Part shown: positions 28,501 through 54,428 of the stretch, piece by piece
Numbering within the stretch: the first letter of the stretch is position 1
How the letters are laid out: each line of letters begins with the position of its first letter
IMG/VR virus record: IMGVR_UViG_3300020578_000006
Coordinates: 165,718-229,717 of that record
Reading direction: 5' to 3' (one strand)
DNA length: 64,000 bases
Made by a program: the position numbers and the translations under genes
Notes under the pieces: generated by a model
What the model was told of the DNA's origin: nothing
Databases searched by the model: none
The model's input: the letters and a program-made list of their open reading frames with translations, nothing else

Positions 28501-31500
28501 CCATTTAAAAATGATATATGTAAAGTGTTTGCCCCGGTACCAGGTGTATCGTCACTATCAGAAATTACAGCTGAATTCCCTGCAGTAGCACTATAAAGAT
28601 CTGTTACTGATAAACTTGCTAGATGGGTAAGGGCTCCTATGGTAACTTCATTGCTAGAGAGGTATTGCAAAACGGTACTTAATGCAAAATCTGGTTGCCA
28701 GTATCCGGAATTGGTTGTTGTTGTATTATAATTACTTACCCAGTTATTACTGTTTCTGCCATTTCCTGTTCCTGCTAAATCTATGCTGTTAGAAATATTT
28801 AAACCTGCACTAATAGTTACCGTTGTCGAATTAATCTCAAATAAATTTCTTCTAACTGTATCCGAAGTGCCGTTACCAACAATAAAGAGACTTGATGACG
28901 GTTGATTGTATAAACCTATAACAACCTGATTAGATCCGTTGCTAATTAATGATTCACCACCTACGGTGACAGAATTATTACCATAAACATAATTGTTTCT
29001 TCCTGCAAAATTACCAGAAAAATTACCTACTACTACACCTTGATATCCTAAGCCGTAAGAAAAATTACCGTAAGACTCTGATACACTACCTAGTACACTG
29101 TTTTTAATTGTACCTCCGCTAAGATAAGAAAAATTATCTGCACTGGTAAACCTATAGTTCTCTCTCTCAAAATAAAACCCTGCTGTACCGAATGTTGGTC
29201 TATGTACTGTGTCTTGTGAACCACCGTACAATACCCAGCCAGCATTTCCAGCTGCAGAACAAGATATTGTTATGTTTTCAAATGCATATGAATCCATTAA
29301 ATTACCTATAGTAATTTCTAGATCGTTTCCATTTTTTGCTCTTACATAAGCATCAAAATAGCCGTATCTGTAAGTATTACTGTTGGTTAAGGTGTTGTTG
29401 GGTCTATCTGGTAAAATAAATCCTGTTCCCGCAGGGGATGTGGAGGGCATTTCCCTTGGTACCCATAATGTAAGAGGGGAGCCACTCTTAAGTCCAGTTA
29501 AAACACTAGAATTAGTAAATCTAACTAAAACATGTTTAGGAATATTTTTATAATTACCTGTAAGACCTACGTAATCAGTACCTGGTGTTCCAATTTGACT
29601 TGTAATAATAGAGACACCAGGGTTCCCTCCATTTGCTCTAGACTGTAAATTGACATTTTGTCTTGTTTTTTGTGCTGGTACCCAGTTGGATTGATTACCT
29701 ATAAATAAATCAAATCTAAACGTGGAGAGCGTTGGGTTAGCAGAAACCTGAGTACACTGTGCATTATATGATGCTGCTACTATACCGGCGACCCCTGGGT
29801 TAACAGCCAGAGTGACAACCTCACCAACATTGATTAGAGAATAGTTTGTATTGGTGGTTGAGTTAACTCCAATTAATACCCCTGTCAATCTATCAGTATT
29901 TGTTAAAAGTAAAGCGTTGTTAGTGTCAACAAATCCACCCTGATTGGCAGTAATAGTTGTAGAAATTTGAAATTGAGGTAGGGTGTGTACAAAAAATCTA
30001 TTTGTATACCCGCTAGGTAGGTTATAACCATAAACATCGCTAACATTACCACCCATGGTCATTTGCCATTCTCGGGTAGCGTTAAATGGCGCGCCTACCC
30101 ACATTACGTGGGTGTGATCTGAACCCCCGGTAAAGTTATTAATACCTGCTCTAAAAGTCATTCCGTGTGTAATGGCGGCTCTTCCATCACTTACAAATGT
30201 TGTGCCTGGGTCCATGTTATCTACGTTTTGAATATGAAGTCCGTAGACACCTAGGTTAGGTAAATTCCTTACGGAAGTATCGTAAGTAGGTGATTGGCCT
30301 TTAAGTATCAAGCCGCCAGGTAATGCAAAAGTTGATTCGGAATTAAAGAAATCGTAATTTTGCCGAAGCGTTGCACTTAAGGCAGGGTAATCTGAGTTTT
30401 TAACTAGCGTTCCAATCTTAGGTGAAATTACTATTCCACCGGCGCTAATTCTATCTGTTACAGTATTGCTTAGTGTTCTTACGTCGTTTGTAGAAAGATA
30501 GTTTGTTACTGTAGGTAGTATTTCAGCACTTTCTTCCCAAGTCGTGGATAGTGCTTGTACAGTGTTCTTAACACTATCCCAACCAGCTGATATTTCTGAA
30601 ACCGATGTATATGTCGAATTCCAGTTAGCAGTTACCGGGGCTATATCATTGGTTACAGAGCTATAAGCTTGATCCCAGTTAGCAGTTACCGGGGCTATAT
30701 CATTGGTTACAGAGCTATAAGCTTGATCCCAATTAGCAGATGTATCCCTTACAGATGTGTAATTATTATCCCACTTAGCACTATTCTGACTTACTGAGGT
30801 GTATGTTCCTCCACCATCGTTCCAGCTTGCACTAACAGCAGCTACACTACCATAAACACTATCCCAGTTAGCAGAGTTGTTTCTACTAGATGTATAATTG
30901 CTGTTCCAATTAGCTGATACAGCAGCAACATCTGATATAAAACTAGATTCTTCCCAAGCATCTGAGAGTGACCTTACTGTTGTTTCGACTGATTCCCAGC
31001 CAGCTGAATTACCTTGGGTAGTACTATAAACTGAATTCCAGTTAGCAGAAGTATCTCTTACAGATGTTTCAACTGATTCCCAACCCCCACTATTACTTTG
31101 TGTGGTGCTATATACACTATTCCAGTTAGCAGATGTATCCCTTACAGATGTGTAATTATTATCCCACTTAGCACTATTCTGACTTACTGAGGTGTATGTT
31201 CCTCCACCATCGTTCCAGCTTGCACTAACAGCAGCTACACTACCATAAACACTATCCCAGTTAGCAGAGTTGTTTCTACTAGATGTATAAACTGAATCCC
31301 AATTAGCAGAATTATTTCTACTAGATGTATAATTGCTGTTCCAATTAGCTGATACAGCAGCAACATCTGATATAAAACTAGATTCTTCCCAAGCATCTGA
31401 GAGTGACCTTACTGTTGTTTCGACTGATTCCCACCCTCCACTATTATTTTGGGTAGTACTATATACACTATTCCAGTTAGCGGATGTATCCCTTACAGAT

Positions 31501-32072
31501 GTTTCTACACTCTCCCACCCTGCAGAATTACTTTGTGTAGTACTGTAGGCGGAATTCCAATTAGCAGAATTATTTCTACTAGATGTATAGGTACTATCCC
31601 AGTTAGCAGAAGTGGTTCTTGAAGATGTATAATTGCTATTCCAATTAGCTGATGCATCTCTTACAGATGTTTCAACTGATTCCCAGCCCCCACTATTGCT
31701 TTGTGTAGTGCTATATACACTATCCCATTCAGCTGAATTTGCTGAAGTTGCTGTATATGCCTGATCCCATTTTCCACTATTTTGTAAGACACTTGTATGT
31801 ACTGATTCACCTAACGTTTTTAAGAAAAATATTTCTGCTAAATCTCTGTTACCTGATAATATTTTATATAAGCTAGTAAAGGTGTCGACCGCACTTAAAC
31901 TACCAGAGACTATTAAGTCACCAGGCAAAACTATTTCAGAATTTACCGGGTAAGCTGAAGCAGGTAAAAAATAGTTGTAGCTAGAATCAATTAGATTCTT
32001 AAAATCTGCTTCTGACGGAAATTTGCCAGTCTTAAATGCAGTGTATAATTCAGCTATATTGACAATTGCCAC
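25533..32072 (-). CDS. Giant 2179-aa fibre/adhesin with Trp-containing 14-aa repeats and a YadA-head-like segment
   Basis: N-terminal FKTGKFPSEADFKNLIDS; A(N/D)WDSTYTSVSETS repeats; GN.S..G repeats ending LFIVGNGTS; AATAAATA-4-GTG. Confidence 0.8.
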   Translation of the reverse strand: MAIVNIAELYTAFKTGKFPSEADFKNLIDSSYNYFLPASAYPVNSEIVLPGDLIVSGSLSAVDTFTSLYKILSGNRDLAEIFFLKTLGESVHTSVLQNSGKWDQAYTATSANSAEWDSVYSTTQSNSGGWESVETSVRDASANWNSNYTSSRTTSANWDSTYTSSRNNSANWNSAYSTTQSNSAGWESVETSVRDTSANWNSVYSTTQNNSGGWESVETTVRSLSDAWEESSFISDVAAVSANWNSNYTSSRNNSANWDSVYTSSRNNSANWDSVYGSVAAVSASWNDGGGTYTSVSQNSAKWDNNYTSVRDTSANWNSVYSTTQSNSGGWESVETSVRDTSANWNSVYSTTQGNSAGWESVETTVRSLSDAWEESSFISDVAAVSANWNSNYTSSRNNSANWDSVYGSVAAVSASWNDGGGTYTSVSQNSAKWDNNYTSVRDTSANWDQAYSSVTNDIAPVTANWDQAYSSVTNDIAPVTANWNSTYTSVSEISAGWDSVKNTVQALSTTWEESAEILPTVTNYLSTNDVRTLSNTVTDRISAGGIVISPKIGTLVKNSDYPALSATLRQNYDFFNSESTFALPGGLILKGQSPTYDTSVRNLPNLGVYGLHIQNVDNMDPGTTFVSDGRAAITHGMTFRAGINNFTGGSDHTHVMWVGAPFNATREWQMTMGGNVSDVYGYNLPSGYTNRFFVHTLPQFQISTTITANQGGFVDTNNALLLTNTDRLTGVLIGVNSTTNTNYSLINVGEVVTLAVNPGVAGIVAASYNAQCTQVSANPTLSTFRFDLFIGNQSNWVPAQKTRQNVNLQSRANGGNPGVSIITSQIGTPGTDYVGLTGNYKNIPKHVLVRFTNSSVLTGLKSGSPLTLWVPREMPSTSPAGTGFILPDRPNNTLTNSNTYRYGYFDAYVRAKNGNDLEITIGNLMDSYAFENITISCSAAGNAGWVLYGGSQDTVHRPTFGTAGFYFERENYRFTSADNFSYLSGGTIKNSVLGSVSESYGNFSYGLGYQGVVVGNFSGNFAGRNNYVYGNNSVTVGGESLISNGSNQVVIGLYNQPSSSLFIVGNGTSDTVRRNLFEINSTTVTISAGLNISNSIDLAGTGNGRNSNNWVSNYNTTTTNSGYWQPDFALSTVLQYLSSNEVTIGALTHLASLSVTDLYSATAGNSAVISDSDDTPGTGANTLHISFLNGVNVSSNLSARNIVYAFNGNSNDWNSVYSTTRTNSAGWESVETLVRSLSDSWEESAFITPLQTASASWDSVYSTTRTNSAGWGSVETLVRSLSDSWEESAFITPLQTASASWDSTYTSVSEASANWDSTYTSVSETSADWDSTYTSVSETSADWDSTYTSVSETSANWDATYTDVSETSANWDATYTDVSETSANWDATYTAVSETSANWDATYTAVSETSANWDATYTAVSETSADWDSTYTSVSETSADWDSTYTSVSETSADWDSTYTSVNETSADWNSTYTSVSETSADWDSTYTSVNETSADWDSTYTSVSETSADWDSTYTSVSETSADWNSTYTSVSETSADWDSTYTSVSEASANWDSTYTSVSETSADWDSTYTSVSETSANWDQAYTSVSETSADWDSTYTSVSETSANWDQAYSSVTNDIAPVTANWDQAYSSVTNDIAPVTANWDQAYSSVTNDIAPVTANWDATYDYVNNNSLKWNGTYTTYNTLSNSYIRDIGDNMIGKLTTSQTLSTNFTNADEFVSKRYVDSLVLEFASVSGNFVSSLYYTKTDVDEILIPLQSSRDTVNVLSGDWNNVYTDVSNTSATWDATYTDVSETSADWDQAYSSVTNDIATVSANWDATYTDVSETSADWNNVYTDVSNTSANWDATYTDVSETSANWDATYTSVSETSANWDATYTSVSETSADWVSTYTSVSETSADWDSTYTSVNETSADWDSTYTSVNETSADWDSTYTSVNETSADWNSTYTSVSETSADWNSTYTSVSETSADWDSTYTSVNETSADWDSTYTSVNETSADWDSTHTTVNSLSNLRYTLTPYMASMTPAVQMEYSNYITLSANDLGNRLLEGGSLRGMLYLDMTNSNVAKHLRVQATQTTPPNWSDETSTDIIKLSGTNTLKNVRSLVKQFVGAAIDVGGSTKVIFQASDALENDGTSNLPLVSMDYNPANPIHLRIGLDALSTEVLLSYIALSGGFIRVE
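26060..26760 (-). repeat. 42-bp coding tandem repeats, distal block of the fibre gene
   Basis: Repeated TCCCA(A/G)TC(A/G)GCTGAAGTCTC units. Confidence 0.85.
27075..28170 (-). repeat. About 22 x 42-bp plus 3 x 54-bp coding tandem repeats
   Basis: Counted from the translation (14-mers, then ANWDQAYSSVTNDIAPVT x3). Confidence 0.9.
30600..31760 (-). repeat. Proximal repeat block of the fibre gene (14/18-aa units, nested duplications)
   Basis: SANWNSVYSTTQ and DAWEESSFISDVAAVS units repeated. Confidence 0.85.
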
Positions 32073-37333: not shown

Positions 37334-37693
37334 CTAAAACGGTGTTGTAAGAGAGGGATTTGGACTAATGAGAGGATTAACAGGGGGTATAGGGGCTGCT
37401 GTGGCTTGTGTGTCAACAGAAGCTTCTGTTCCAGCTGCCGTATCAACTTCTTCCACAGAAATGTCAGTCAATTCATTAATACCCAGAGCGGCAAGATTTA
37501 CTTTATTTTCTTCAACATAAAGGGTGACTGAATTATCTCCAATTCTAACAATAACAGGTGCAGTATGGCCTTCTACAGTTAAAATTAGTTCTCCAAACGA
37601 ATTTTTTGAGAAAGTTAGCTTAATACCATCTTCACTAAAAACATAAACTGAAGAAACTATTAACAAAATTAACGCTAAGATAGTAGTTTTCAT
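37334..37693 (-). CDS. Secreted protein
   Basis: Signal peptide MKTTILALILLIVSS; Pro-rich C-terminus. Confidence 0.6.
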   Translation of the reverse strand: MKTTILALILLIVSSVYVFSEDGIKLTFSKNSFGELILTVEGHTAPVIVRIGDNSVTLYVEENKVNLAALGINELTDISVEEVDTAAGTEASVDTQATAAPIPPVNPLISPNPSLTTPF

Positions 37694-37738: not shown

Positions 37739-37960
37739 TCATTCATTTACAACAAATACTGTATAATGTCCGTTGCCAACACATTCATAATAGTATCTAA
37801 ACTTCTCATCTCCTTCCAAATAGACCCCGTAAACATCTTGTCCATTAAAATATTCTTTCAAACAAAGAACCTCATGTTTGCCAATTTTATCCTTGATCCA
37901 TCTTACAGCTTCATACACATCTCCTTCGTGAACTATTACTTTAAGATCATTTAGATTCAC
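37739..37960 (-). CDS. Hypothetical protein
   Basis: 73-aa ORF, coupled overlap. Confidence 0.5.
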   Translation of the reverse strand: MNLNDLKVIVHEGDVYEAVRWIKDKIGKHEVLCLKEYFNGQDVYGVYLEGDEKFRYYYECVGNGHYTVFVVNE

Positions 37961-38222
37961 TATCTTCTCCTGCTGCTGTCTGTATATCTAATTTGTTACT
38001 GTAAACCTTTTCTAAGACGGCTATAGACATAATACCTATAATTATAAACGCTGCAATAATTGAAACAGCTTTGCAAATTGTTCTTCTGACATTTTGCCTC
38101 TTATGGTATGCTTTATAAGAAGAAAGAAAATTATTAAAATAGTCAGAGGAAGGCGAATTAAGATCAGAAGCCCTCTTAATAAGTCTCGAAAGCTCATTCA
38201 TTGGGGCCCTCTTGTTGCACAA
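37947..38222 (-). CDS. Single-TM membrane protein
   Basis: Hydrophobic AVSIIAAFIIIGIMSIAVL segment. Confidence 0.5.
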   Translation of the reverse strand: MCNKRAPMNELSRLIKRASDLNSPSSDYFNNFLSSYKAYHKRQNVRRTICKAVSIIAAFIIIGIMSIAVLEKVYSNKLDIQTAAGEDSESK

Positions 38223-41200
38223 CTAAAATTAATAGTCGCAGTATTTTTAACTGCTGCAGCGTTTAATGAGGCTACATCTGACTCCATAGAATCTTCTACC
38301 ATAATTATTTTTATTGCAGCAGTTCCAAATGCTGGTATGTTCTTATACATAAATCTCCATTCTTTTTCATATCTAGAATTTACATCTACTTTAGGAACTT
38401 GTGCCCATGCTAAATTACCTTTAGACCCATCAGGGTTAACAAGAACACCATTTCCATTGTCCTCTCCGGTTGCCGCATCATCGTTAAGAGCGTTAGCATC
38501 TCTTATATTATAGAATACTTCCTTTACAGTGCTATCTGTTTTTATAACAAATTCGTAGTTTTGACTAGTTAATGTTTCTCCCGGTCTAGGATAAAGAATT
38601 TGACCTGAAGGGGGTTTAGAATCATAATAAAAAACTTGAGTAAAAGTATTATAGTAAGGTGTAAAGCCTGGCGCCTTAAGGAATGCTCGAGCTCTTAATA
38701 CATGATAGCCTTCTTCCAAGCCCACTCTTTTACTTGCAAAATCATTATGTACATAGTTTTCAACTGTTGTTGCATTAAAATTAGTTACAGAAAATTGTGA
38801 TGCCATTTTGCTTTTTATACTGACCATATTACCGTTAGAAGGAAAAACACTTAATGTATCTAAATAAGTGCCGCCAATTTTATAACGCAATTGACCCGTT
38901 GGCCAAGGTATTTGTACAGACCACCAATACGTAGGTCTTCCATTACCATCATTCGGACCAGTTCCGTCTCTTATAGCTTCTAGTACTCTTGTTGAAGCTA
39001 TTGCAGCTACGCCTCCATAGCCCTCAGGAAAAGAAATACCATCAGTTGTGTAATATACAAAAAGTTTAGCATTATTATAATACTCACCAGTTTTGATTCT
39101 AATAGTGGCACTTGAAGCATTAGCTACAAACTGACGTCTACCATCTGCAATTACGTTTGGATCATGATAGATGTAATCGGAAGGTGTAAAGAATGCGTTA
39201 GGACCATTTCCTAAATTAAAATTAACTCTTCTAAGCCCCTTTATAGCTATATAGGTTTCAGCTCCTTGCGAACCTACTATATTACGATTAACGTTAGCTG
39301 CAGCAAACTTATCTCTTACTCGGTAATCAAATTTCATTTGTTCATAACCTAAAAACATATCATCAGTGCCTGGGGGATAGTCCCTCTTGATGTCCGTCAT
39401 CGAACCCAGGCCCATTTGAGAGTTAACGTCAACCCCTCCATCTAGTTTTAATAATACATTTTCCGCTGAGCCATCGAGTTGTACAATAAAGCTTAAATTT
39501 TGACCAGATCTTACAATAGGAATAAATGTTTCATATGTATAATCAGAAGTGTTTGTATCATATAAGCCATAAGGGTTAAACGCTGCATCTCCATTCGTTC
39601 CATCTTTTCTTTTAACTTTTATGTAAGGAACATTAGTACCGTTTTCTCTTATGTTTATAGCATTTAAACCTGTGTTTAAAGTAGGTCTTTCAGGAGTACG
39701 ATAAGAGAACATATAATAACTACTAGGCGGGACTATGACATTTCTTAATTCGTTTGCATACTTATAAAACCCTACTTGACCAGATCCGTTGGGCCCGGTA
39801 GCATATTGAAACAGATAAGCATCAGAAGGAAATGAAGAAGTAATAGGTGCAGACTTTCCATTCCATCTATTTCCGTTTATCATTGCGATCATAGTAACTC
39901 CGGTTGCATCAGAAGATGCACCATATCTTCTATCTATTCTTTCATAAGCAACATAATCGTTATTGGACCATATTCCCTTTTGACTGCCTCTTGCAAAATT
40001 ATTATGTATTTTAACTAAATTAGGAATCCTAGGGTCACTCCATTGTCCAAGAAAAGCTGAATTTGCTATACGGGGAAATTCACCTCCTGAATTTGTTAGT
40101 ACCCCTGCATGGTAATTGCCATCTGTATATATAAGAGGAAGGCCTGCTCTAGTAAAATAGAATGCGTGTTGAATATGGCGGTCGGTAGACCAACCATTAT
40201 CGTGAGATTGTGAATGCATAACAGCTACATCTGAACCAAAGCCTCCTGAGCCTTGACCATCAAAGCCAGATAAATTATTCCCTATTCTGTTATCTAGATT
40301 ACTTTTAAGAATATTATCTACTAGTCTCATTCCTGCATTAATATAATCACCATAAGGAGGTGGTTCACCGAGGTGCTCACCAAACATCATAGCATCATCT
40401 CTACCTAGATCAGTATTAAAAACACTATCTCGGTGATTGATATCTGCAAAGCCTCTAGATATATTAAACTGTCTTTGTGCTTGACCTACATAACCATAAT
40501 CAGAAAAATCTTTATCAGTTCCATAAGAAGCACCAAAGAAATCATATGGCACGTGCTTTACAGCGTCTAATCTTAATCCATCACATTTAGTTCTATCCAT
40601 AAACCAACGTACCGCTCTATTAAGATATTCTTCTACGTACTCTGAATAATATGCTTCATTAGCAGCAAGATACTCAACTGTTAATCCATTCTCATAACCA
40701 AACCCTACATAATTACCGTTTGCGTCATAACAATAAAATTCTGGGTTATTAGGATGTCTTAAGAACTTTACCTTTTGTGTCCACCATCCCTCGTTTGGTC
40801 CATGATTCTTATTCCAGATACCCGTCTCTGTAGCAATATCTATTAAATCAGATAATCCTCTGTTTTGTACTTCCCATACATTACCCCAATCACTTGTGTT
40901 ATACCATTTGCGGTAAGTACCATCAGGCATTAACTTAAGATGAAAGTCTTCAGGTCTCATTCCTGGATACAAATCAAGAGGTGTATCAGCTGTATACCCA
41001 GGTGTATCAAACCCGCGGTGATTCATTATATTATCAAAATAAACTCTGATACCAAAACGGTGTGCGGTTTCAATTAACATCATGAGTTCAGCTTCAGTAC
41101 CATACCTTGTATAAGTAGAACCTCTTTGGTCTTTAGAACCTAAATCAAATGGATCAAATAAATCATATCCTACTGAAAATGAACTACCAGCTTTTGCAGG

Positions 41201-41356
41201 GGGAGGAAGCCATAGAGAATCATAACCTACTTCTGCAAGTTCAGGAAGCTTGGCAGTAATTTCTGCCCAACTAGTATTAAAATACTGAAGCATAGCCTCA
41301 GCTTGAACGTTAACTGAAATGAAAAGAGAAGCGAAAAATGCAATTGCCCTTTTCAT
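38198..41356 (-). CDS. Secreted multidomain GH13 alpha-amylase-family enzyme
   Basis: Signal peptide; LWLPP, GYDLFD, DNIMNH, GLRLDAVKH (nucleophile), FGEH (acid/base), SHDN. Confidence 0.9.
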   Translation of the reverse strand: MKRAIAFFASLFISVNVQAEAMLQYFNTSWAEITAKLPELAEVGYDSLWLPPPAKAGSSFSVGYDLFDPFDLGSKDQRGSTYTRYGTEAELMMLIETAHRFGIRVYFDNIMNHRGFDTPGYTADTPLDLYPGMRPEDFHLKLMPDGTYRKWYNTSDWGNVWEVQNRGLSDLIDIATETGIWNKNHGPNEGWWTQKVKFLRHPNNPEFYCYDANGNYVGFGYENGLTVEYLAANEAYYSEYVEEYLNRAVRWFMDRTKCDGLRLDAVKHVPYDFFGASYGTDKDFSDYGYVGQAQRQFNISRGFADINHRDSVFNTDLGRDDAMMFGEHLGEPPPYGDYINAGMRLVDNILKSNLDNRIGNNLSGFDGQGSGGFGSDVAVMHSQSHDNGWSTDRHIQHAFYFTRAGLPLIYTDGNYHAGVLTNSGGEFPRIANSAFLGQWSDPRIPNLVKIHNNFARGSQKGIWSNNDYVAYERIDRRYGASSDATGVTMIAMINGNRWNGKSAPITSSFPSDAYLFQYATGPNGSGQVGFYKYANELRNVIVPPSSYYMFSYRTPERPTLNTGLNAINIRENGTNVPYIKVKRKDGTNGDAAFNPYGLYDTNTSDYTYETFIPIVRSGQNLSFIVQLDGSAENVLLKLDGGVDVNSQMGLGSMTDIKRDYPPGTDDMFLGYEQMKFDYRVRDKFAAANVNRNIVGSQGAETYIAIKGLRRVNFNLGNGPNAFFTPSDYIYHDPNVIADGRRQFVANASSATIRIKTGEYYNNAKLFVYYTTDGISFPEGYGGVAAIASTRVLEAIRDGTGPNDGNGRPTYWWSVQIPWPTGQLRYKIGGTYLDTLSVFPSNGNMVSIKSKMASQFSVTNFNATTVENYVHNDFASKRVGLEEGYHVLRARAFLKAPGFTPYYNTFTQVFYYDSKPPSGQILYPRPGETLTSQNYEFVIKTDSTVKEVFYNIRDANALNDDAATGEDNGNGVLVNPDGSKGNLAWAQVPKVDVNSRYEKEWRFMYKNIPAFGTAAIKIIMVEDSMESDVASLNAAAVKNTATINFSCATRGPQ

Positions 41357-41364
41357 ATTAATAT

Positions 41365-41925
41365 TTATTTGGCAAACAATTTCTTATCTTTATATGGACA
41401 AAAACTATATACATCATCAAAAGGTGTCTTGTTAGGATCGTCCTGCTTTTGATTTTTACCTAAGCTTACTACTATGAAATCTTTAGGTACATTTTCTTGA
41501 AAGTTTTTACCATAATATTCTACTTTACCAGAACCGTCTATATCCCATTTTAATGCATATTGATTCTTCCACGGGTCAAGTAAGGTACCATCTTCTTTTA
41601 TACCTTCACCATAATAAGGTCTTAAGATTTTACATACATCTTTACTATCATCTATTCTAGTAGGAGGACCATACCATGCGTAATATTCATGGTCAAAAGG
41701 ATACCCCTTTCTAGGCGCAGGCCATGCAATCAAGCCATTTTCAGATTTATAAAGCTGTACAGCATGATACAACCCTCTCATTTCTACATTCTGTACTTTA
41801 GATATTTTTGTTTTTTCTTGTATATGCTGGTAAGCAGGAAATGACAAGCTAACTAGTAAAAGAATGATGCTGACGGCTACAAGCATCTCTATAATAGTAA
41901 ATGCTGTAGCCGTCAGCTTCTTCAT
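41365..41925 (-). CDS. Type IV pilin/pseudopilin-like protein
   Basis: AFTIIEMLVAVSIILLLVSLSFPAY N-methylation segment; LDPWKNQY and S.GKN. Confidence 0.85.
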   Translation of the reverse strand: MKKLTATAFTIIEMLVAVSIILLLVSLSFPAYQHIQEKTKISKVQNVEMRGLYHAVQLYKSENGLIAWPAPRKGYPFDHEYYAWYGPPTRIDDSKDVCKILRPYYGEGIKEDGTLLDPWKNQYALKWDIDGSGKVEYYGKNFQENVPKDFIVVSLGKNQKQDDPNKTPFDDVYSFCPYKDKKLFAK

Positions 41926-41927
41926 TC

Positions 41928-42581
41928 TTACTTTCTCTTTTTAAGAAGTAGTAGTGCGCTAACACCTAACAATGATAGGATTGAAGGTTCGGGTACAGCA
42001 GTAAATTGTGTTAAGTAATTTACTCCCCCGTTGCTTGCATAGTTTTCAAAACTACCACTGCTTCCACCGTTAGACCATGTAAAGTCAGCCTTTGCATACA
42101 TTTCTATTGTGTATGTTTTAGGTGCTTGAATGGTACCAGCGGTTACGTTCTGTAATAAGTTAACAGAAGAATTGGCTGCCCAATATTTGTTAACGTTACC
42201 ATCAGTCCATGAGTTACTAAACGGAACGTTATATGAACTGAATGCACCTTTATCAGCTGCACCAGTTTCATACACCCTCCAGTATAAAGTAACTGCATTA
42301 GCAGAATCTGTAGAACTTTGCCAGGTTTTAGCAGTTGCACTAGCTAATTGTAGTAACCCACCTTGATTCATGTTAATAGTACCAAGGCTAGCAGGTAAAG
42401 AATTAGCAGGGTTTGGACCATGGGTATCACCAAGCAAATTATAGAACGTAGTTGCTTGATTAATCACATCCAAACTAGAAGCATCTACACTAAACCCAAC
42501 ACCTACTGCATACATAGTATTGGCATAAGATGCTGATGCTAACCCTAAACTTATTACAATAGCTAGAATTAATTTATTCAT
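41928..42581 (-). CDS. PEP-CTERM sorting-domain protein
   Basis: Signal peptide plus VPEPS-ILSLLGVSALLLL-KKRK. Confidence 0.9.
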   Translation of the reverse strand: MNKLILAIVISLGLASASYANTMYAVGVGFSVDASSLDVINQATTFYNLLGDTHGPNPANSLPASLGTINMNQGGLLQLASATAKTWQSSTDSANAVTLYWRVYETGAADKGAFSSYNVPFSNSWTDGNVNKYWAANSSVNLLQNVTAGTIQAPKTYTIEMYAKADFTWSNGGSSGSFENYASNGGVNYLTQFTAVPEPSILSLLGVSALLLLKKRK

Positions 42582-44146
42582 ACATTACCCTCCTTTCTTT
42601 TGAGCGTTCTTATTGCAAGTACCCCTAGTCCTCCAAGCAGCATTAAGCTACCAGCAGAGGGTTCAGGAATACCTGAAACTTCAATGTTATTAACAAACAG
42701 ACCATAGTTTGGTTGATCTGCTGTAGTGGTCTGTATGTCACCTGCATAGAAGTGAATAGTAGTAATATAATCCGGCACATTTACATTAGTCACAAATAAC
42801 ACCTCTGGATTTCCGTATAAATAAGCACTTACTTCAACAAGTGTAGGGGTTAATTGCTCTACCATGTAAGTTAATGCTTGTTGATAGCCATTGGCTAACA
42901 CCTGAGTATTAGTTAATCCAGTACCTGCAAAGGTAATAGGATCTGACCATACATTCTGGAATCTAAACACTGCAGTGTTTCCAGACATGAATTCAACACC
43001 TCGGTTACCTCCATTCCAAAGATAGTTTGCATCTACTGATAGAGTTTGACCTGCTATAAGGCCACCACCATTGAGTACAAACCAACCGTTTGAGTATTGA
43101 TTATAAGCCGTATTACCAGGTACAAAATTAAATGCACTTGCTCCAATACTAGTTCTTCCTCCTTGAGAGGAATTACTAATCTGGGTTATAGCAGATGTGT
43201 CATTTTGGAAGTACCAAGTACCTACACTTGTACCAGCACCTTCTATCCATGTTGCAGTGGTATAGCTGCTGGCATCCTCTATACCTAATACAGCTGCATG
43301 TGTTGTATTTAGACTAAAGATAGCGAGCAATGCAGCAAGCAAGCTAACTTTAGTTTTGTTTTTTGTTCTCATAAAACCTAATAATGTTGCGCCTATTACA
43401 AGCAATAACCAAGTATCTGGTTCAGGAATAATACCTACATCAGAGAGCGAATCACCCACAGATAGATAATCAATATGCACAACAGGTGCTGCAGTTGCAG
43501 AACCTTGTCTTAAGTTAATAGCAGATATAAAAGAAGCTGGCTCTGAACCTGTAGTAGATAGCCAATTAACTGTTCCTAGTTCTGCTACAAGTAATGATCT
43601 GTTTGTATCATTAGGGTTTATGTACAAGCTAAATGTATCATTAAGAGTGCCAGCTACAAAATCCCATGCCATAACTATAGTGTATTCAGTGTTAAAATCT
43701 AATAATGTAGTTCCCCAGGTCATTGCAGATCCTGTGCCTGATGCAGATTGTAATCCCAGTTGAAATCCAGCACCTGAGCTTCTAGCAGCCAATCTTTGAT
43801 AAAAATTGGAAGAAGTACCTGCAGGGTCAGATAGGTTTAAGAAGTAATCACCATTAACAAAGGCAGATGCAATTTTAAGATCTACTCTTGTATATAAAGT
43901 ATTACCAGACGTCTTTACTACTTGTGAAGTTAGTGCTTTCCAAACATCTTGACCTGTTGTATTAATAATTGCTTTACCATCTTGGTACTGAATAGGATTA
44001 TTAGAAGCAGTGGATGTTTGAGTCCATCCATTCTGCCCTACTAGATTTCCATTTACATATCCTGTTGAAAAGTCATCAATTAGATATGTTGCTGCATTGA
44101 GATTTATAGCTACCAATGCAAGTAGTGTTGTTATTAGTTTTTTCAT
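42578..44146 (-). CDS. Tandem double PEP-CTERM protein
   Basis: Signal; internal IPEPDTWLLLVIGATLLGFMRTK; second signal; terminal IPEPSAGSLMLLGGLGVLAIRTLKRK. Confidence 0.85.
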   Translation of the reverse strand: MKKLITTLLALVAINLNAATYLIDDFSTGYVNGNLVGQNGWTQTSTASNNPIQYQDGKAIINTTGQDVWKALTSQVVKTSGNTLYTRVDLKIASAFVNGDYFLNLSDPAGTSSNFYQRLAARSSGAGFQLGLQSASGTGSAMTWGTTLLDFNTEYTIVMAWDFVAGTLNDTFSLYINPNDTNRSLLVAELGTVNWLSTTGSEPASFISAINLRQGSATAAPVVHIDYLSVGDSLSDVGIIPEPDTWLLLVIGATLLGFMRTKNKTKVSLLAALLAIFSLNTTHAAVLGIEDASSYTTATWIEGAGTSVGTWYFQNDTSAITQISNSSQGGRTSIGASAFNFVPGNTAYNQYSNGWFVLNGGGLIAGQTLSVDANYLWNGGNRGVEFMSGNTAVFRFQNVWSDPITFAGTGLTNTQVLANGYQQALTYMVEQLTPTLVEVSAYLYGNPEVLFVTNVNVPDYITTIHFYAGDIQTTTADQPNYGLFVNNIEVSGIPEPSAGSLMLLGGLGVLAIRTLKRKEGNV

Positions 44147-44793
44147 AATCTTTTTCTTAATGCTAGTAATCCTAGTAATGTTAAATGTAAGGTTGAAGGT
44201 TCAGGAACTACTTCAATTATTTCATTACCTCCGTTATAAGAAAATGTACCTACCAATGCTGTAGTATTAGAAGAGAAGACAAACGATTCCATATTAGGTG
44301 TGCTATCAAACAGAGGGGCGCGCCATAAAGTATCAGTTAAAATAGCTTTATCGTAAGAACTGTTATAAGGTGCAGCTGTAAAATTAACTAGGTCTGCATC
44401 ATATATAGCTAATGCAAGTTGTGTATTTACCGCAACATCAGTATTATCTATTTTGCTATAATTGATTTGCATCTCAAGAAAATCTACTCCCGTATCAACA
44501 AAACCTGTACCGTTAGGAAGAGGGGAGAAAATACCATTACTATAAGTACCCCATAACGCTGACATGTAACGGGTATTAACTGTATTATTATCTACAAGAA
44601 CAGAAAATAAATCGTCATACAAAACTATAGAAGAAACAGCTTTGGATTCGGACACCATAAACCAACCAATAAAAAAGCCGCACATTGTGCGGCTTAGCAT
44701 CTTTAAAGCGTTATAAGCGCTCTTGTATCCTAGCATGTGAGGTTCTCCCTCATATAATGTACTTATACCTGCTGTTGTATTGTTTGCAAGCAT
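44143..44793 (-). CDS. PEP-CTERM sorting-domain protein
   Basis: VVPEPSTLHLTLLGLLALRKRL; true start may be a later Met. Confidence 0.85.
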   Translation of the reverse strand: MLANNTTAGISTLYEGEPHMLGYKSAYNALKMLSRTMCGFFIGWFMVSESKAVSSIVLYDDLFSVLVDNNTVNTRYMSALWGTYSNGIFSPLPNGTGFVDTGVDFLEMQINYSKIDNTDVAVNTQLALAIYDADLVNFTAAPYNSSYDKAILTDTLWRAPLFDSTPNMESFVFSSNTTALVGTFSYNGGNEIIEVVPEPSTLHLTLLGLLALRKRL

Positions 44794-45364: not shown

Positions 45365-46042
45365 ATGGGCAACATATGGAATACACTCATTGATGTGCAG
45401 CATATGCTGCAAAAGCAGTTTGAGATCAGTGGCAAGGAAATACAAGAACCAGGCATGGATCGGTTCAATCAACCGGGGTGGATAAACCGGGTATGGACAT
45501 CTGATAATTATCGCAGAGCTCATATTGATGTAGTTGACACCCGTGACATCAAGGGACTATGGATGATGCATTGCTGCATCTTTCCGCATGTACACAATGA
45601 TGCACCCATATTTGGGTTTGATGTGATTGCCGGTAAGAATATTATTACAGGTTGTTTTCATGATTACAGTGTGACTGTGAACAAGGACCATGACATGTGC
45701 ACTTGGTTTGCTCAATATGTGAAACAATTTTCATGGCGCAAAATCAGAGAATTACCCGCATGGGCCAATCGTATATTTTCTCCAAGCATGGTGGCTGCCA
45801 GCCAAGTCACATGTGAAACAGAATTGCAGCAAATCTCTCAAATGGTAACAGACACTTCTGCATATTATTTGCAACATATAGGAGCATCCAATCACAAGGA
45901 TGTAAACACTACTGCAGCTCAAAATTATTATGCTGCCAATCAGAAGGAAAATCCTCACACTCCCCGGGTTATGGCTAAACTGGGTCTTAAGGAAGATGAC
46001 ATTAAAGTCTTTATTCAAAATTGCTTGTTTCCTGAGATATGA
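45365..46042 (+). CDS. pcyX: Ferredoxin-dependent bilin reductase, PcyX/PcyA type
   Basis: YRRAHID55, WMMH69CCIFP, PIFGFD86, QNYY..NQKENPHT. Confidence 0.85.
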   Translation: MGNIWNTLIDVQHMLQKQFEISGKEIQEPGMDRFNQPGWINRVWTSDNYRRAHIDVVDTRDIKGLWMMHCCIFPHVHNDAPIFGFDVIAGKNIITGCFHDYSVTVNKDHDMCTWFAQYVKQFSWRKIRELPAWANRIFSPSMVAASQVTCETELQQISQMVTDTSAYYLQHIGASNHKDVNTTAAQNYYAANQKENPHTPRVMAKLGLKEDDIKVFIQNCLFPEI

Positions 46043-46676: not shown

Positions 46677-47810
46677 TTATTTAAATCCGATAATTTTTTT
46701 AGGCTGGTCTTTTTCGGCTAAGTCTTCCTTATCATAATTGTAAATCTCTGTAAGAGTTAAAGGTTTATCTACTTTTTTGTCGACACCTAAGAATTTAAAT
46801 ACTTTAGTAGCCTCTTCTTCTGTTAACTCTTTAAACTCGTGTTCGGCAATTAATCTTCCCTTACGTAGTAGTGCTGAGTCAAGCTTTTCTCTTGATGTGT
46901 TTAAGGTAGCAATTATTTGTATATTCAAACAATCTCCTAATACTCCATCGGTCATATTAAGAATATTTGATACCCCATTGTTTGTGTCGTTTGATTCTCT
47001 CGACCCAATCACCTTTTCTGCGTCTTCAATAACCAATATTGAGTTTTTATTTTCCATTAAAAATGGTAAAAAGTTGGGCGCAGTAATACCTTCTGTCATA
47101 TTTGGAGGAACAAAAATGACTTTCTTCTTTAAGAGGGTTGTTAGATATTTAATATAAGTTGTTTTACCGGTGCCTGGCTTTCCGTTTAAAATAACCAACC
47201 CAGTATCACCGAGTGTATTAAGTCTTTTAACTATTGTTTTGTGTTTTTTAATAAATCCCTCACCATAATTTAACTCAAGATCCATTTCTTTACATGGAAG
47301 CTTTGTTGTAAACTCTTTTAATGTGTAGCCTTCCCCCGGGGTCCCAATAATCAAATATATATTATTTGTTGCTATTTCTTCGTGAACAGTAAAATATTTT
47401 AACAAAGAGTCTAGTTTTTCTTTTTTATCAACTAAGGCAATTAGGGTGAGAGAGTGAGCATTAATGTCTTTGGTTGTGGCACTATCATAATCATACTCCA
47501 AATCAATTTCGTTTCCAGCAAGTGTGTCCAGTTTTGCTCTTTCTAGTAAGACTAATACTCCATCACCTTCAAAAGCATATGACGTAGAAACAGTCTCTAC
47601 CTTCTTACCTTTTTTGTAGGGTACAACTACTTCGTAGGCTAGAGTAAAATCTTTTTTAAGTTTTTCTATACAGTCCTCCTTGTATAGTAATCTTACCGGT
47701 CGATATACAAAAGGCTGGCTATTAAATTTATGACAAAAATAATAGCCTAAATTAAAAAGGTTATAGGTGCCTGATGTTTGACTATAAGGCTGAAACATGG
47801 TATCACCCAT
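46677..47810 (-). CDS. AAA+ ATPase
   Basis: GKPGTGKTT, LVIEDAE, LNMTDG, ATLN, ALLRKGRL. Confidence 0.9.
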   Translation of the reverse strand: MGDTMFQPYSQTSGTYNLFNLGYYFCHKFNSQPFVYRPVRLLYKEDCIEKLKKDFTLAYEVVVPYKKGKKVETVSTSYAFEGDGVLVLLERAKLDTLAGNEIDLEYDYDSATTKDINAHSLTLIALVDKKEKLDSLLKYFTVHEEIATNNIYLIIGTPGEGYTLKEFTTKLPCKEMDLELNYGEGFIKKHKTIVKRLNTLGDTGLVILNGKPGTGKTTYIKYLTTLLKKKVIFVPPNMTEGITAPNFLPFLMENKNSILVIEDAEKVIGSRESNDTNNGVSNILNMTDGVLGDCLNIQIIATLNTSREKLDSALLRKGRLIAEHEFKELTEEEATKVFKFLGVDKKVDKPLTLTEIYNYDKEDLAEKDQPKKIIGFK

Positions 47811-54387: not shown

Positions 54388-54428
54388 GTCTATATTATGG
54401 CTGAACTGGGGTTTGAGTCAACTACAAT

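What the first reader, a model, noticed from the sequence alone, without database searches (positions are those of the whole stretch)
38198..44793. Phage-borne host-surface remodelling cassette: PEP-CTERM x3 (four sorting signals), pilin and secreted GH13
Seen: five co-oriented, overlap-coupled or closely spaced genes, most with clear export signals, four complete PEP-TM-basic motifs, an N-methylation pilin and an intact alpha-amylase. They are continuous with phage genes (uvsE, exonuclease) and similarly AT-rich; no exosortase gene is in the window. Known: PEP-CTERM proteins are exosortase-anchored, often glycosylated surface proteins abundant in Verrucomicrobiota. Inference: a lytic phage uses host exosortase and prepilin peptidase to display its own proteins on the infected cell, for glucan foraging, superinfection exclusion, pilus jamming or adhesion. 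I am not aware of this being described as a phage system. It is the strongest novelty candidate here.
Basis: partly seen in the sequence, partly recalled or inferred. Interest (0 to 1): 0.88.

Follow-up and report, generated by a model that had tools for sequence, protein, structure and literature searches.

The report
Phage cassette of exosortase-sorted proteins plus amylase
A group of large freshwater phages carries a conserved five-gene block, copied long ago from Verrucomicrobia, that should coat the infected cell with sugar-binding-like surface proteins and secrete a starch/glycogen-cutting enzyme using the host's own protein-sorting machinery, a kind of phage cargo not described before.

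Summary
Five co-oriented, overlapping or near-abutting minus-strand genes (44793..38198) encode three PEP-CTERM proteins carrying four sorting signals, a prepilin-type protein and a 1052-aa GH13 with intact catalytic residues. All have export signals.

It is not an assembly artefact. A second assembly is 99.97-100% identical across both junctions. The block recurs at 71-93% amino-acid identity in at least three other phage backgrounds with different flanks. dN/dS is 0.03-0.18. Its GC (37%) matches the phage (36%).

The genes derive from Verrucomicrobiota:
- The phage GH13s form one clade nested among verrucomicrobial enzymes.
- The pilin family was found only in Chthoniobacterales- and Methylacidiphilaceae-type genomes.
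- There it sits beside PEP-CTERM proteins, "domain B" proteins fused to starch-binding CBM20/48 modules, and in some loci this same GH13.

Most likely reading: a phage-domesticated alpha-glucan capture-and-hydrolysis surface module that depends on host Sec, exosortase and prepilin peptidase. No candidate exosortase or peptidase gene is in the window. Exclusion/release and aggregation roles remain open.

The 522-aa "double" protein is an in-frame fusion at a PEP-CTERM/signal-peptide junction; some relatives have it unfused.

No phage PEP-CTERM cassette turned up in PHROGs, GenBank phages or the literature. I rate it a new variant of a known kind, interest about 0.65.

The parts
44143..44736 (-). 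PEP1: small PEP-CTERM protein of about 197 aa. The mechanical ORF extends to 44793. Signal peptide, beta-rich ectodomain, PEP-CTERM tail encoded at 44146-44211.
   Evidence: PF07589 20.8 bits; TIGR02595 16.9. Start at Met20 is supported by an upstream GAGGGAG and by 195-203-aa homologues. Distant paralogue of PEP4: the PEP4-family HMM hits the L025 PEP1 homologue at E 1.7e-6. 82% identical to the L009 copy, dN/dS 0.10.
42578..44146 (-). PEP2/3: 522-aa tandem protein. Order: signal peptide, domain A (ConA-like lectin fold), internal PEP-CTERM, second signal peptide, domain B, terminal PEP-CTERM.
   Evidence: AlphaFold model: domain A pLDDT 70-89. Foldseek matches L-type lectins, galectins, calreticulin and LamG. 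71% identical to the L009 copy, dN/dS 0.18.
43349..43432 (-). Internal PEP-CTERM signal (about aa 239-266: IIPEPD, helix, then the basic stretch MRTKNKTK).
   Evidence: It is the best-scoring PEP-CTERM stretch of the protein (aa 240-262). It is conserved in P0001-P0008.
43295..43372 (-). Second, internal signal peptide (aa 259-284), starting at a conserved Met that overlaps the basic tail of the preceding PEP-CTERM. This Met is the native start codon of the domain-B gene.
   Evidence: In variants L035 and L033 domain B is a separate ORF; in L035 it was read to start at this Met (MKTTNKTKAG...THA|AVLG). In the window, L009 and L025 it is fused in frame to three different upstream partners. No conserved Shine-Dalgarno lies upstream of it.
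42581..42673 (-). Terminal PEP-CTERM signal of domain B (aa 492-522).
41928..42581 (-). PEP4: 217-aa PEP-CTERM protein. Signal peptide, beta-sandwich, PEP-CTERM tail encoded at 41931-41999.
   Evidence: TIGR02595 18.2 bits. Model pLDDT 87, with no convincing PDB fold match. 118 distant relatives, mostly about 200-aa PEP-CTERM proteins; 21 of 48 match floc_PepA and 31 of 48 match NF038129. P197-E198-P199 are invariant. dN/dS 0.065.
41365..41925 (-). Prepilin-type (class III signal) protein of 186 aa with a conserved globular domain (WYGPP...DPW.NQY..KWDID.SG.VEY). The leader and N-terminal helix are encoded at 41839-41925.
   Evidence: Cellular homologues are 53-55% identical in Chthoniobacterales MAGs and 41% in a Methylacidiphilaceae chromosome. 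92% identical to the L009 copy, dN/dS 0.025.
38198..41356 (-). Secreted GH13 alpha-amylase-family enzyme, 1052 aa. Signal peptide at 41300-41356, catalytic domain about aa 20-480, then about 570 aa of uncharacterised C-terminal domains.
   Evidence: PF00128 E 1e-12. The N-terminal region aligns to Bacillus-type alpha-amylases in the PDB. The catalytic residues are invariant. Phage-contig GH13s form a monophyletic clade nested in Verrucomicrobia. 93% identical to the L009 copy, dN/dS 0.036.

Best explanation
The cassette is an auxiliary ('moron'/AMG-type) operon kept by a clade of freshwater jumbo phages that most likely infect Verrucomicrobiota. It is a phage-domesticated version of a verrucomicrobial cell-envelope gene neighbourhood: PEP-CTERM or domain-B surface proteins, then a prepilin-type protein, then a large GH13. 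In cellular genomes that neighbourhood is tied to alpha-glucan (starch/glycogen) binding and breakdown.

Proposed mechanism:
1. All products cross the inner membrane through host Sec (inferred from the signal peptides).
2. The four PEP-CTERM-tagged beta-sandwich ectodomains are handed to the host exosortase and end up on or around the cell surface. These are PEP1, domain A (lectin-like fold), domain B and PEP4. This step is inferred from the sorting signals; no candidate exosortase gene is in the window.
3. The pilin-like protein is cleaved by the host prepilin peptidase and enters a host type II secretion or type IV filament apparatus (inferred).
4. The GH13 endo-amylase is exported (signal peptide shown; catalytic residues intact).

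Net effect I consider most likely: the infected cell gains a surface apparatus that captures alpha-glucan and hydrolyses it, supplying sugar to fuel replication of a roughly 230-kb genome.

The 522-aa ORF is an in-frame fusion of two PEP-CTERM genes. Its predicted topology is a helical hairpin (PEP-CTERM helix, 8 basic residues, signal-peptide helix). Exosortase plus signal peptidase would therefore release two separate surface proteins, or domain B may be made from its own internal Met.
For: Real and phage-borne:
- The window lies in the 229,717-bp contig IMGVR_UViG_3300020578_000006.
- An independent 70,646-bp assembly matches across both junctions at 99.975-100%.
- The surrounding genes are phage-typical: UvdE, 5'-3' exonuclease, PhoH, FolE/QueD/QueE, a tail-fibre-like protein and DUF6267.

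Conserved module:
- The same gene order recurs in L009/L010, L025-27 and eight further low-GC metagenome loci (L031-L037; L038/L039 show only domain B next to the pilin), with unrelated flanks (RNR/glycosyltransferases, or PhoH).
- Between the window and the 21-kb L009 locus, only the cassette and one other ORF are shared.
- dN/dS is 0.025-0.175 with dS above 1.

Verrucomicrobial origin:
- The nine phage-contig GH13s form one clade (support 100) inside a verrucomicrobial clade.
- Full-length cellular homologues at 47-52% identity occur in Luteolibacter, Haloferula, Prosthecobacter and Chthoniobacterales.
- In one genome per GTDB species, the pilin family was found only in Chthoniobacterales and Methylacidiphilaceae, plus one unclassified MAG.

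Link to alpha-glucan:
- In the Methylacidiphilaceae chromosome (L020) the pilin homologue lies between a domain-B-like protein and a CBM20/CBM48 surface protein. Next to them are two GH13s and a 59%-identical copy of the phage-type GH13. L070 repeats this layout.
- In L047 and L056 the gene right after the pilin homologue encodes a domain-B module together with CBM48. The L056 match is above the Pfam cut-off; the L047 match is below it. In L080 the neighbouring gene encodes CBM20.
- Six of 45 cellular-type metagenome loci have a domain-B-family ORF adjacent to the pilin homologue. L021 does too.
- Chthoniobacterales loci L016/L017 have PEP-CTERM proteins next to it.

Protein properties:
- Domain A has a ConA-like lectin fold.
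- The GH13 catalytic residues are intact.

Background from papers:
- GH13 is over-represented in eutrophic-lake Verrucomicrobia MAGs (PMC5615132).
- A PepA-type PEP-CTERM protein binds exopolysaccharide to cells (PMC9850573).
Against: - No expression, processing or activity data exist.
- The GH13 has no anchor, so its products could be a public good of little private benefit to the infected cell.
- No recognised carbohydrate-binding module was detected in any phage PEP protein. The CBM20/48 modules are only in cellular neighbours.
- PEP4 has no informative fold match, and the domain B model is of low confidence.
- In Chthoniobacterales, which hold the closest pilin homologues, the fetched flanks (up to about 8-10 kb) contain no GH13.
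- In the second phage GH13 clade (L003/L004) the gene lies beside portal, adaptor and tail-fibre genes and without the cassette. That is compatible with another role.
- Phage GC (36%) is 14-30 points below all candidate host relatives, so the actual host lineage is unknown.
- The other 165 kb of the contig could not be checked for an exosortase.
Confidence: 0.5

Rival explanations
1. Envelope remodelling for the phage's own traffic. The PEP-CTERM proteins mask a surface receptor, and the GH13 destroys a glucan-type receptor or matrix polymer. This blocks superinfection, stops progeny from re-adsorbing to infected cells and debris, and frees virions from capsule or floc material. The pilin-like protein would interfere with or re-purpose the host's type IV filaments.
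For: - All products are exported to the compartment where receptors lie.
- The PEP ectodomains evolve faster than the enzyme and the pilin (71-85% vs 92-93% identity).
- Gene 2 swaps its N-terminal domain between phage variants: domain A, a PEP1-like domain, or a beta-strand-repeat domain. That is the pattern expected of surface-interaction proteins in an arms race.
- The domain-B family also occurs in giant proteins with Pro/Thr-rich linkers on a related phage contig. One of these has a tail-fibre-connector-like end. This hints that domain B can bind something on the host surface.
- GH13 lies beside structural genes in L003/L004.
Against: - The cellular counterparts of the pilin, domain B and GH13 sit with starch-binding modules in what looks like a nutrient-acquisition locus.
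- No known superinfection-exclusion or defence family matched.
- There is no evidence that the host carries an alpha-glucan surface polymer.
- A signal peptide on the GH13 argues against a virion-borne depolymerase.
Confidence: 0.25
2. Induced aggregation or adhesion. PepA-like PEP-CTERM proteins tether exopolysaccharide to the infected cell, so that it flocculates or sticks to particles and neighbours. This raises the local density of new hosts at lysis.
For: - PEP4 relatives match the flocculation-associated PepA family (21 of 48, best E 8e-13). PEP1 hits it weakly.
- Over-expressing a single PepA converts soluble exopolysaccharide to cell-bound polymer and restores flocculation in Aquincola (PMC9850573).
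- Domain A has a lectin-like fold.
Against: - The window proteins score far below the PepA cut-off (18.5 vs 80 bits).
- A glucan-cutting enzyme in the same operon would work against matrix building, unless it acts on a different polymer.
- This reading gives no role to the pilin-GH13 pair, which is the most conserved part of the cassette.
Confidence: 0.1
3. Artefact or passenger. Either this is a chimeric assembly or recently captured host DNA with no function for the phage, or the contig is cellular rather than viral.
For: - The genes are clearly of cellular origin.
- The 64-kb window contains no capsid, portal or terminase gene.
- One cassette variant (L035) lies next to an ABC-transporter permease gene.
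Against: - Two independent assemblies agree across both junctions.
- The cassette GC equals the phage GC and is 14-30 points below its cellular relatives.
- The cassette is conserved in several phage backgrounds under strong purifying selection.
- The phage GH13s are a distinct old clade that also includes contigs with a portal (E 1e-99) and a head-tail adaptor.
- Phage-typical genes surround the cassette.
Confidence: 0.03

Closest known systems
PEP-CTERM / exosortase (EpsH, XrtA) protein-sorting system (Haft et al. 2006, cited in PMC3048395; TIGR02595 / PF07589)
   Same: [quoted passage not shown] Such systems are typical of Verrucomicrobia; Akkermansia has 21 such proteins and one EpsH.
   Different: The substrates are encoded by a phage, with no candidate exosortase in the 64 kb examined. 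One signal is internal, followed in frame by a second signal peptide and a second PEP-CTERM protein.
Flocculation-associated PEP-CTERM protein PepA of Zoogloea and Aquincola (NF033554; PMC9850573)
   Same: PEP4 and PEP1 belong to the same broad class of roughly 200-aa beta-sandwich PEP-CTERM proteins. Many PEP4 relatives match the PepA model.
   Different: The window proteins are far below the family cut-off. They have no RpoN/PrsT/PrsK context, and no flocculation phenotype is known for them.
Verrucomicrobial alpha-glucan locus, for example Ca. Methylacidiphilaceae MiH-22 (L020) and metagenome loci L047, L056, L070
   Same: It contains the same pilin family, the same domain-B family and the same large GH13 family as neighbours.
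   Different: The cellular loci add CBM20/CBM48 surface proteins and further GH13s, and their domain-B proteins are not PEP-CTERM-tagged. The cellular GH13s are 1300-1670 aa; many of the complete ones end in an extra C-terminal module (...RFYRV...) that the phage enzyme lacks. The phage version is compact and low in GC.
Klebsiella Pul secreton: the GH13 pullulanase PulA exported by a type II system with the pseudopilin PulG (my own knowledge)
   Same: A pseudopilin-type gene is adjacent to a secreted GH13. One source names a homologue 'pseudopilin PulG'.
   Different: The pilin is not a GspG equivalog (TIGR01710 29 bits vs cut-off 88.85). No other type II secretion genes are present, and the GH13 is amylase-like rather than a pullulanase lipoprotein.
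Phage-encoded glycoside-hydrolase auxiliary metabolic genes, for example the validated soil-virus chitosanase (PMC9485262) and GH13 listed in virome surveys
   Same: A host-derived carbohydrate-active enzyme is kept on a phage genome.
   Different: Here the enzyme is one part of a five-gene exported module with sorting-signal proteins and a pilin, conserved as a unit across phages.
Phage or prophage 'moron' surface proteins that use host sorting: lipoprotein exclusion factors such as Cor and Llp, and prophage LPXTG/sortase substrates (my own knowledge)
   Same: A phage gene product relies on a host envelope-sorting enzyme to reach the cell surface.
   Different: The sorting pathway is different (exosortase). 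There are several cargo proteins plus an enzyme, and no evidence yet of an exclusion phenotype.

Membership tests
PEP-CTERM sorting-domain proteins (TIGR02595 / PF07589) | The C-terminal tripartite signal (PEP motif, hydrophobic helix, basic cluster) scores above the curated cut-off | tested here: met
   TIGR02595: PEP1 16.9, PEP2/3 24.6 (two stretches), PEP4 18.2, all against a cut-off of 16. Pfam: 20.8, 32.9 and 17.1 against a cut-off of 20.7, so PEP4 is below the Pfam cut-off. P-E-P is invariant in 48 PEP4 relatives.
PEP-CTERM sorting-domain proteins (TIGR02595 / PF07589) | The signal lies at the extreme C-terminus of a protein that has an N-terminal signal peptide | tested here: met
   This holds for three of the four signals. 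The fourth (aa 239-266 of the 522-aa ORF) is internal because of an in-frame gene fusion.
PEP-CTERM sorting-domain proteins (TIGR02595 / PF07589) | An exosortase is encoded in the same genome | tested here: not met
   No ORF of 80 aa or more in the window has more than two predicted membrane helices. The remaining 165 kb of the contig and the host genome could not be examined, so the dependence is presumed to be on a host enzyme.
PEP-CTERM sorting-domain proteins (TIGR02595 / PF07589) | Cleavage or sorting at the PEP motif by exosortase | not testable with these tools
   This needs expression in an exosortase-positive and an exosortase-negative host, followed by mass spectrometry.
Type IV pilin-like proteins (prepilin N-terminal cleavage/methylation domain, TIGR02532 / PF07963) | A short basic leader, a small residue at -1, Phe+1, Glu+5 and a hydrophobic N-terminal helix | tested here: met
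   The sequence reads MKKLTATA|FTIIEMLVAVSIILLLVSL. Position -1 is Ala, as it is in many cellular homologues. Glu+5 is nearly invariant. A family profile hits the N-terminal helices of solved pilins at E 8e-9.
Type IV pilin-like proteins (prepilin N-terminal cleavage/methylation domain, TIGR02532 / PF07963) | HMM score above the curated cut-off for this protein | tested here: inconclusive
   PF07963 scores 14.1 against 21.2, and TIGR02532 scores 14.8 against 16.3. Homologues P0017, P0019 and P0022-24 carry PF07963 in the precomputed annotation.
Type II secretion major pseudopilin GspG (TIGR01710) | Equivalog-level match over the whole protein | tested here: not met
   The score is 29 bits against a cut-off of 88.85, and only the N-terminal 60 residues align. 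The globular domain is specific to this verrucomicrobial family.
Glycoside hydrolase family 13 (alpha-amylase family) | Catalytic (beta/alpha)8 domain with conserved regions I-IV: Asp nucleophile, Glu acid/base, Asp stabiliser and the associated His and Arg residues | tested here: met
   PF00128 scores 48.5 bits against a cut-off of 22. D264, E327 and D386, together with H113, R262, H268 and H385, are present. All except H385 (114/121) are invariant across 121 homologues.
Glycoside hydrolase family 13 (alpha-amylase family) | Hydrolytic or transferase activity on alpha-glucosidic bonds | not testable with these tools
   This needs an enzyme assay. All NCBIfam equivalog scores are far below their cut-offs, so no substrate specificity can be assigned.
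Flocculation-associated PepA (NF033554) | Equivalog-level HMM match | tested here: not met
   PEP1 scores 18.5 bits against a cut-off of 80, and PEP4 has no hit. Only distant relatives of PEP4 match the model.
Phage auxiliary / moron gene module | Located on a bona fide phage genome, of host origin, and conserved among related phages under purifying selection | tested here: met

The most novel reading that the evidence does not exclude
A phage uses two host envelope-sorting systems together, exosortase and the prepilin peptidase / type II-IV filament machinery, to install a complete, self-contained glycan-capture and hydrolysis apparatus on the infected cell. Part of it is delivered as a natural tandem 'polyprotein', in which an internal PEP-CTERM signal and an adjoining signal peptide are cut by exosortase and signal peptidase to release two surface proteins. 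This would be the first phage-encoded exosortase substrates and the first functional internal PEP-CTERM signal. It would also give a handle on the still unknown fate of exosortase cargo.
Probability: 0.3. Interest if true: 0.8.

Novelty: new variant of a known kind. Interest (0 to 1): 0.65.

Why it matters
- **Wider range of phage cargo.** Exosortase/PEP-CTERM sorting is widespread in environmental bacteria, but how it works and where its cargo ends up are poorly understood. A compact, conserved phage cassette holds only the substrates, a pilin-like partner and an enzyme. If phages do feed proteins into this pathway, the list of host systems that viruses exploit grows, and so does the concept of auxiliary metabolic genes: from single cytoplasmic enzymes to multi-protein cell-surface modules.
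- **A handle on uncharacterised bacterial families.** The cassette flags a recurrent verrucomicrobial gene neighbourhood (pilin-like protein, domain-B protein, CBM20/48 protein, large GH13). This is probably a polysaccharide-utilisation device in a phylum that lacks Sus-type systems. The phage association therefore gives functional leads for those families.
- **Ecology.** Infected Verrucomicrobia may process algal or bacterial alpha-glucans differently from uninfected cells.

Tried and rejected
- **Chimeric assembly or recent host capture:** rejected. Two assemblies agree across both junctions, GC is ameliorated to the phage value, and the block is conserved in several phages.
- **Promoter and terminator scans:** hit counts equal the shuffled expectation, so they are uninformative.
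- **Megablast and tblastn against 50,697 GenBank phage records:** nothing relevant.
- **PHROGs:** no family for PEP1-4 or the GH13; only weak N-terminal pilin hits.
- **PADLOC:** no defence or exclusion family; the only hit was generic GH13 similarity to a GlgB-labelled model.
- **IMG/VR scans with the pilin, PEP2/3 and PEP4 families:** they return only this phage's two contigs. The 48-sequence PEP4 alignment was too diverse to scan with.
- **Domain B versus the L020 684-aa protein:** direct BLASTP was not significant. The link needed profiles and remains partial for L020 (E 3e-6 over 90 residues).
- **My visual impression that domain B resembles L003 fibre domains:** the domain-B HMM alone did not confirm it. 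The bridge through L021 did: hhalign probability 96.9%, E 2e-10.
- **PEP4 fold search:** only poor matches, TM about 0.3, mostly TEAD domains. No function can be drawn from it.
- **Apparent 'GH13' hits in L074 and L080:** these turned out to be shared accessory domains (TSP3, CBM20, Ig-like), not catalytic domains, and were not counted.
- **Shine-Dalgarno before the internal Met of domain B:** not conserved, so internal initiation versus polyprotein processing is unresolved.
- **tRNA scan for host clues:** no tRNAs.
- **Cluster look-up of PEP relatives:** gave no organism names.

Full report
**1. What is there.**
The minus strand between 44793 and 38198 carries five consecutive ORFs. They are 216 aa (probably 197 aa), 522 aa, 217 aa, 186 aa and 1052 aa long. 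The junctions are a 4-nt overlap, a 4-nt overlap, a 2-nt gap and an 8-nt gap.

Pfam and NCBIfam recognise PEP-CTERM sorting domains in the first three. The 522-aa protein has two, at aa 240-262 and aa 492-522. These are the only ORFs in the 64-kb window with such tails.

The fourth protein has a prepilin-type leader: MKKLTATA|FTIIEM followed by a hydrophobic helix. Its own HMM scores are just below the cut-offs. Its family carries PF07963, and a family profile matches the N-terminal helices of solved type IV pilins and of GspG.

The fifth is a GH13 with a classical signal peptide. GH13 regions I-IV are present, and the catalytic Asp264, Glu327 and Asp386 are invariant among 121 homologues.

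PEP1 probably starts at Met20 (44736). A strong Shine-Dalgarno lies upstream, and its homologues are 195-203 aa.

**2. It is a phage and the assembly is sound.**
The window is part of a 229,717-bp IMG/VR contig. A 70,646-bp contig assembled from another sample is 99.975-100% identical over window positions 27808-51356. That span includes both cassette junctions.

The surrounding genes are phage-typical:
- UvdE endonuclease and a 5'-3' exonuclease
- PhoH, GTP cyclohydrolase, QueD, QueE and thymidylate kinase
- a tail-fibre-like protein, a glycosyltransferase, DUF6267 and a bilin reductase

Cassette GC (36.9%) equals window GC (36.4%). No ORF in the window has more than two predicted membrane helices, so it encodes no candidate exosortase or prepilin peptidase.

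**3. The cassette is a conserved, mobile unit among related phages.**
The same order (small PEP protein, tandem or alternative PEP protein ending in domain B, PEP4, pilin, 1052-aa GH13) occurs in several other backgrounds:
- two contigs of 97 kb and 75 kb (L009/L010), between ribonucleotide reductase and glycosyltransferase genes
- L025-27, downstream of a PhoH gene
- partly on a 169-kb contig
- eight further low-GC metagenome loci

Within the 21-kb L009 locus, only the cassette and one 143-aa ORF have counterparts in the window.

Window versus L009 identities are 82% (PEP1), 71% (PEP2/3), 85% (PEP4), 92% (pilin) and 93% (GH13). dS exceeds 1 and dN/dS is 0.10, 0.18, 0.065, 0.025 and 0.036 respectively. 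All five genes are therefore under purifying selection. The pilin and the enzyme are the most constrained, and the PEP ectodomains the least.

IMG/VR holds the PEP and pilin families only in this phage's two contigs. GenBank phages and PHROGs have no counterparts.

**4. The 'double' PEP-CTERM protein.**
Alignment of 13 relatives and the extra loci shows that domain B is always preceded by another protein's PEP-CTERM signal. The upstream partner varies:
- domain A in the window, L009 and P0002-6
- a PEP1-like domain in P0007 and L031/32
- a 430-aa beta-strand-repeat domain in L025

In L035 and L033 the two are separate, overlapping ORFs. In L035, domain B was read to start at the conserved Met, with its own signal peptide. 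Stand-alone A and stand-alone B proteins also exist (P0009-13).

The window's 522-aa ORF is therefore an in-frame fusion. The basic tail of PEP-CTERM number 2 doubles as the n-region of the next signal peptide. The predicted topology is consistent with the positive-inside rule: helix out-to-in, eight basic residues, helix in-to-out.

Exosortase plus signal peptidase could resolve this into two proteins, or the internal Met could be used as a start. No conserved Shine-Dalgarno decides between the two. The recurrent breakpoints suggest recombination between PEP-CTERM/signal-peptide junctions as a way to shuffle ectodomains.

**5. Origin.**
*GH13.* It has 579 homologues. Full-length relatives at 47-52% identity occur in Luteolibacter, Haloferula, Prosthecobacter, Roseibacillus and Chthoniobacterales. 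Most are 1300-1670 aa.

A tree of 122 sequences puts all nine GH13s from phage-like contigs in one clade (support 100), on a long stem inside a verrucomicrobial clade. There are two subclades:
- the 1052-aa cassette type
- a type of about 1175 aa, found without the cassette on contigs that carry a portal (E 1e-99), a head-tail adaptor and tail-fibre genes (L003, L004)

A 227-kb contig of the second type has a PEP-CTERM gene and a prepilin-type gene 6 kb away from its GH13.

Of the cellular enzymes whose true C-terminus is on record, many end in a module with a ...RFYRV... motif. The phage enzymes lack it, and none has a PEP-CTERM tail.

*Pilin.* A scan of one genome per GTDB species found the family in seven loci:
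- five Chthoniobacterales MAGs, 53-55% identity
- a Candidatus Methylacidiphilaceae chromosome, 41% identity
- one unclassified MAG, 36% identity

*Composition.* These cellular relatives have 50-66% GC against 36% for the phage. The transfer is therefore old and fully ameliorated. The true host is best stated only as Verrucomicrobiota.

**6. What the cellular neighbourhoods say.**
In the Methylacidiphilaceae chromosome (L020), the genes in order are:
- a 59%-identical copy of the phage-type GH13
- two further secreted GH13s
- a 684-aa protein whose C-terminal part matches the domain-B family (E 3e-6)
- the pilin homologue
- an 848-aa surface protein with CBM20 and CBM48 starch-binding modules

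L070 repeats this arrangement.

Other loci add to the picture:
- In L047 and L056 the gene directly after the pilin homologue encodes a secreted protein with an N-terminal domain-B module and CBM48. The L056 match is above the Pfam cut-off; the L047 match is below it. In L080 the neighbouring gene encodes CBM20.
- Domain-B-family ORFs abut the pilin homologue in 6 of 45 cellular-type metagenome loci, and in L021.
- In Chthoniobacterales loci L016/L017 the neighbours are PEP-CTERM proteins.
- L013 has a fragmented large GH13 1.5 kb from the pilin homologue.

The phage cassette is therefore a condensed version of a recurrent verrucomicrobial neighbourhood, and that neighbourhood is associated with alpha-glucan binding and hydrolysis.

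Profile-profile comparison links domain B to the L021 and L003 domains (probability 96.9%, E 2e-10). In L003 the domain is repeated in two giant proteins with Pro/Thr-rich linkers. One of them has a tail-fibre-connector-like end.

**7. Protein folds.**
- Domain A is modelled with pLDDT 70-89. It is a ConA-like jelly roll that matches L-type lectins, galectins, calreticulin, Emp46/47, the lectin domain of a bacterial sialidase and PL7 lyases.
- Domain B is modelled with low confidence.
- PEP4 is a confident beta-sandwich (pLDDT 87) with no informative structural neighbour.
- PEP4's 118 distant relatives are mostly PEP-CTERM proteins of about 200 aa. Many of them match the NF038129, FxDxF and flocculation-PepA families.
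- PEP1 is a distant paralogue of PEP4.

**8. Mechanism.**
*Shown:*
- export signals on all five products
- four PEP-CTERM signals
- a class-III signal on the pilin-like protein
- intact GH13 catalytic residues
- conservation as a unit under purifying selection
- verrucomicrobial ancestry
- association of the cellular counterparts with starch-binding modules and GH13s

*Inferred:*
- Sec export
- cleavage and sorting by host exosortase and host prepilin peptidase
- incorporation of the pilin-like protein into a type II secretion or type IV filament apparatus
- secretion of the enzyme
- binding of glycans by the ectodomains

My preferred reading (about 0.5) is a portable alpha-glucan capture-and-hydrolysis module that boosts carbon and energy supply to the infected cell. 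Two papers fit this:
- GH13 is enriched in Verrucomicrobia from a eutrophic lake (PMC5615132).
- A single PepA-type protein can tether polysaccharide to cells (PMC9850573).

The main rival (about 0.25) is envelope remodelling for exclusion or release. It is favoured by the faster evolution and domain swapping of the PEP ectodomains, by the use of domain B in putative fibre proteins, and by the structural-gene neighbourhood of the other GH13 clade. Induced aggregation (about 0.1) and an artefact (about 0.03) are less likely.

**9. Novelty.**
Phage-borne glycoside hydrolases, including GH13 in virome surveys, and phage-encoded exported 'moron' proteins are known kinds.

Searches of the paper library found no description of phage-encoded PEP-CTERM/exosortase substrates or of this cassette. 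The nearest item is a 2026 preprint that notes a PEP-CTERM domain protein in a virus-like integrative element of Dehalococcoides.

I classify the finding as a new variant of a known kind. It has two unusual features: phage cargo addressed to the exosortase pathway, and a natural internal PEP-CTERM/signal-peptide fusion junction. Interest is 0.65.

Noticed in passing
window 45365-46042 (+); also L004 20267-20923 (-): A ferredoxin-dependent bilin reductase (PF05996, phrog_7278) lies next to the cassette, in a phage whose gene affinities point to non-photosynthetic Verrucomicrobia. A homologue is in the related phage contig L004.
   Followed up: partly
window 25533-32072 (-): A giant 2179-aa ORF is full of 42/84/126-nt tandem repeats. 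The second assembly (L002) is 393 nt (131 codons) shorter within these repeats, an in-frame length polymorphism between samples. Only a sub-threshold DUF948 match (31.9 bits against a cut-off of 37.2) and no PHROG.
   Followed up: partly
window 8275-8931 (-), 10624-11277 (+), 11261-11998 (-), 12058-12804 (+): GTP cyclohydrolase, QueD-like, PhoH and QueE-like genes are clustered. This is the usual phage 7-deazaguanine (DNA modification) gene set.
   Followed up: no
window 21837-24278 (-) and 24275-25528 (-): An 813-aa subtilase (Peptidase_S8, E 1e-29) lies directly downstream of the giant repeat protein, together with a 417-aa protein of unknown function.
   Followed up: no
window 37334-37693 (-) and 37947-38222 (-): Two more small envelope-directed proteins lie just downstream of the GH13. 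One is a 119-aa protein with a signal peptide. The other is a 91-aa protein with one membrane helix whose start overlaps the GH13 stop by 25 nt. Neither is conserved in L009.
   Followed up: partly
L035 102-767 (-): An ABC-transporter inner-membrane permease gene (BPD_transp_1, E 5e-20) lies next to a low-GC cassette variant. This is an unusual gene for a phage contig.
   Followed up: no
L003 10000-13224 (-) and 13627-16764 (-): Two giant phage proteins with long Pro/Thr/Ser linkers carry one and two copies of the domain-B family. One ends in a baseplate/tail-fibre-connector-like segment.
   Followed up: partly
cellular GH13 homologues P0039-P0151: Many verrucomicrobial members of this GH13 family end in a conserved C-terminal motif (...RFYRV/L.V..P). 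No PEP-CTERM tail is present, and the phage enzymes lack the module. It may be a distinct sorting or anchoring domain.
   Followed up: no
window 54000-64000: This stretch has strongly negative GC skew (-0.25 to -0.39) and is packed with ORFs of about 100 aa on the minus strand, unlike the rest of the window.
   Followed up: no
window 46677-47810 (-): A 377-aa AAA/STAND-like ATPase with weak similarity to defence-associated NTPases (nSTAND3, mad8, TRIP13) lies two genes beyond the bilin reductase.
   Followed up: no
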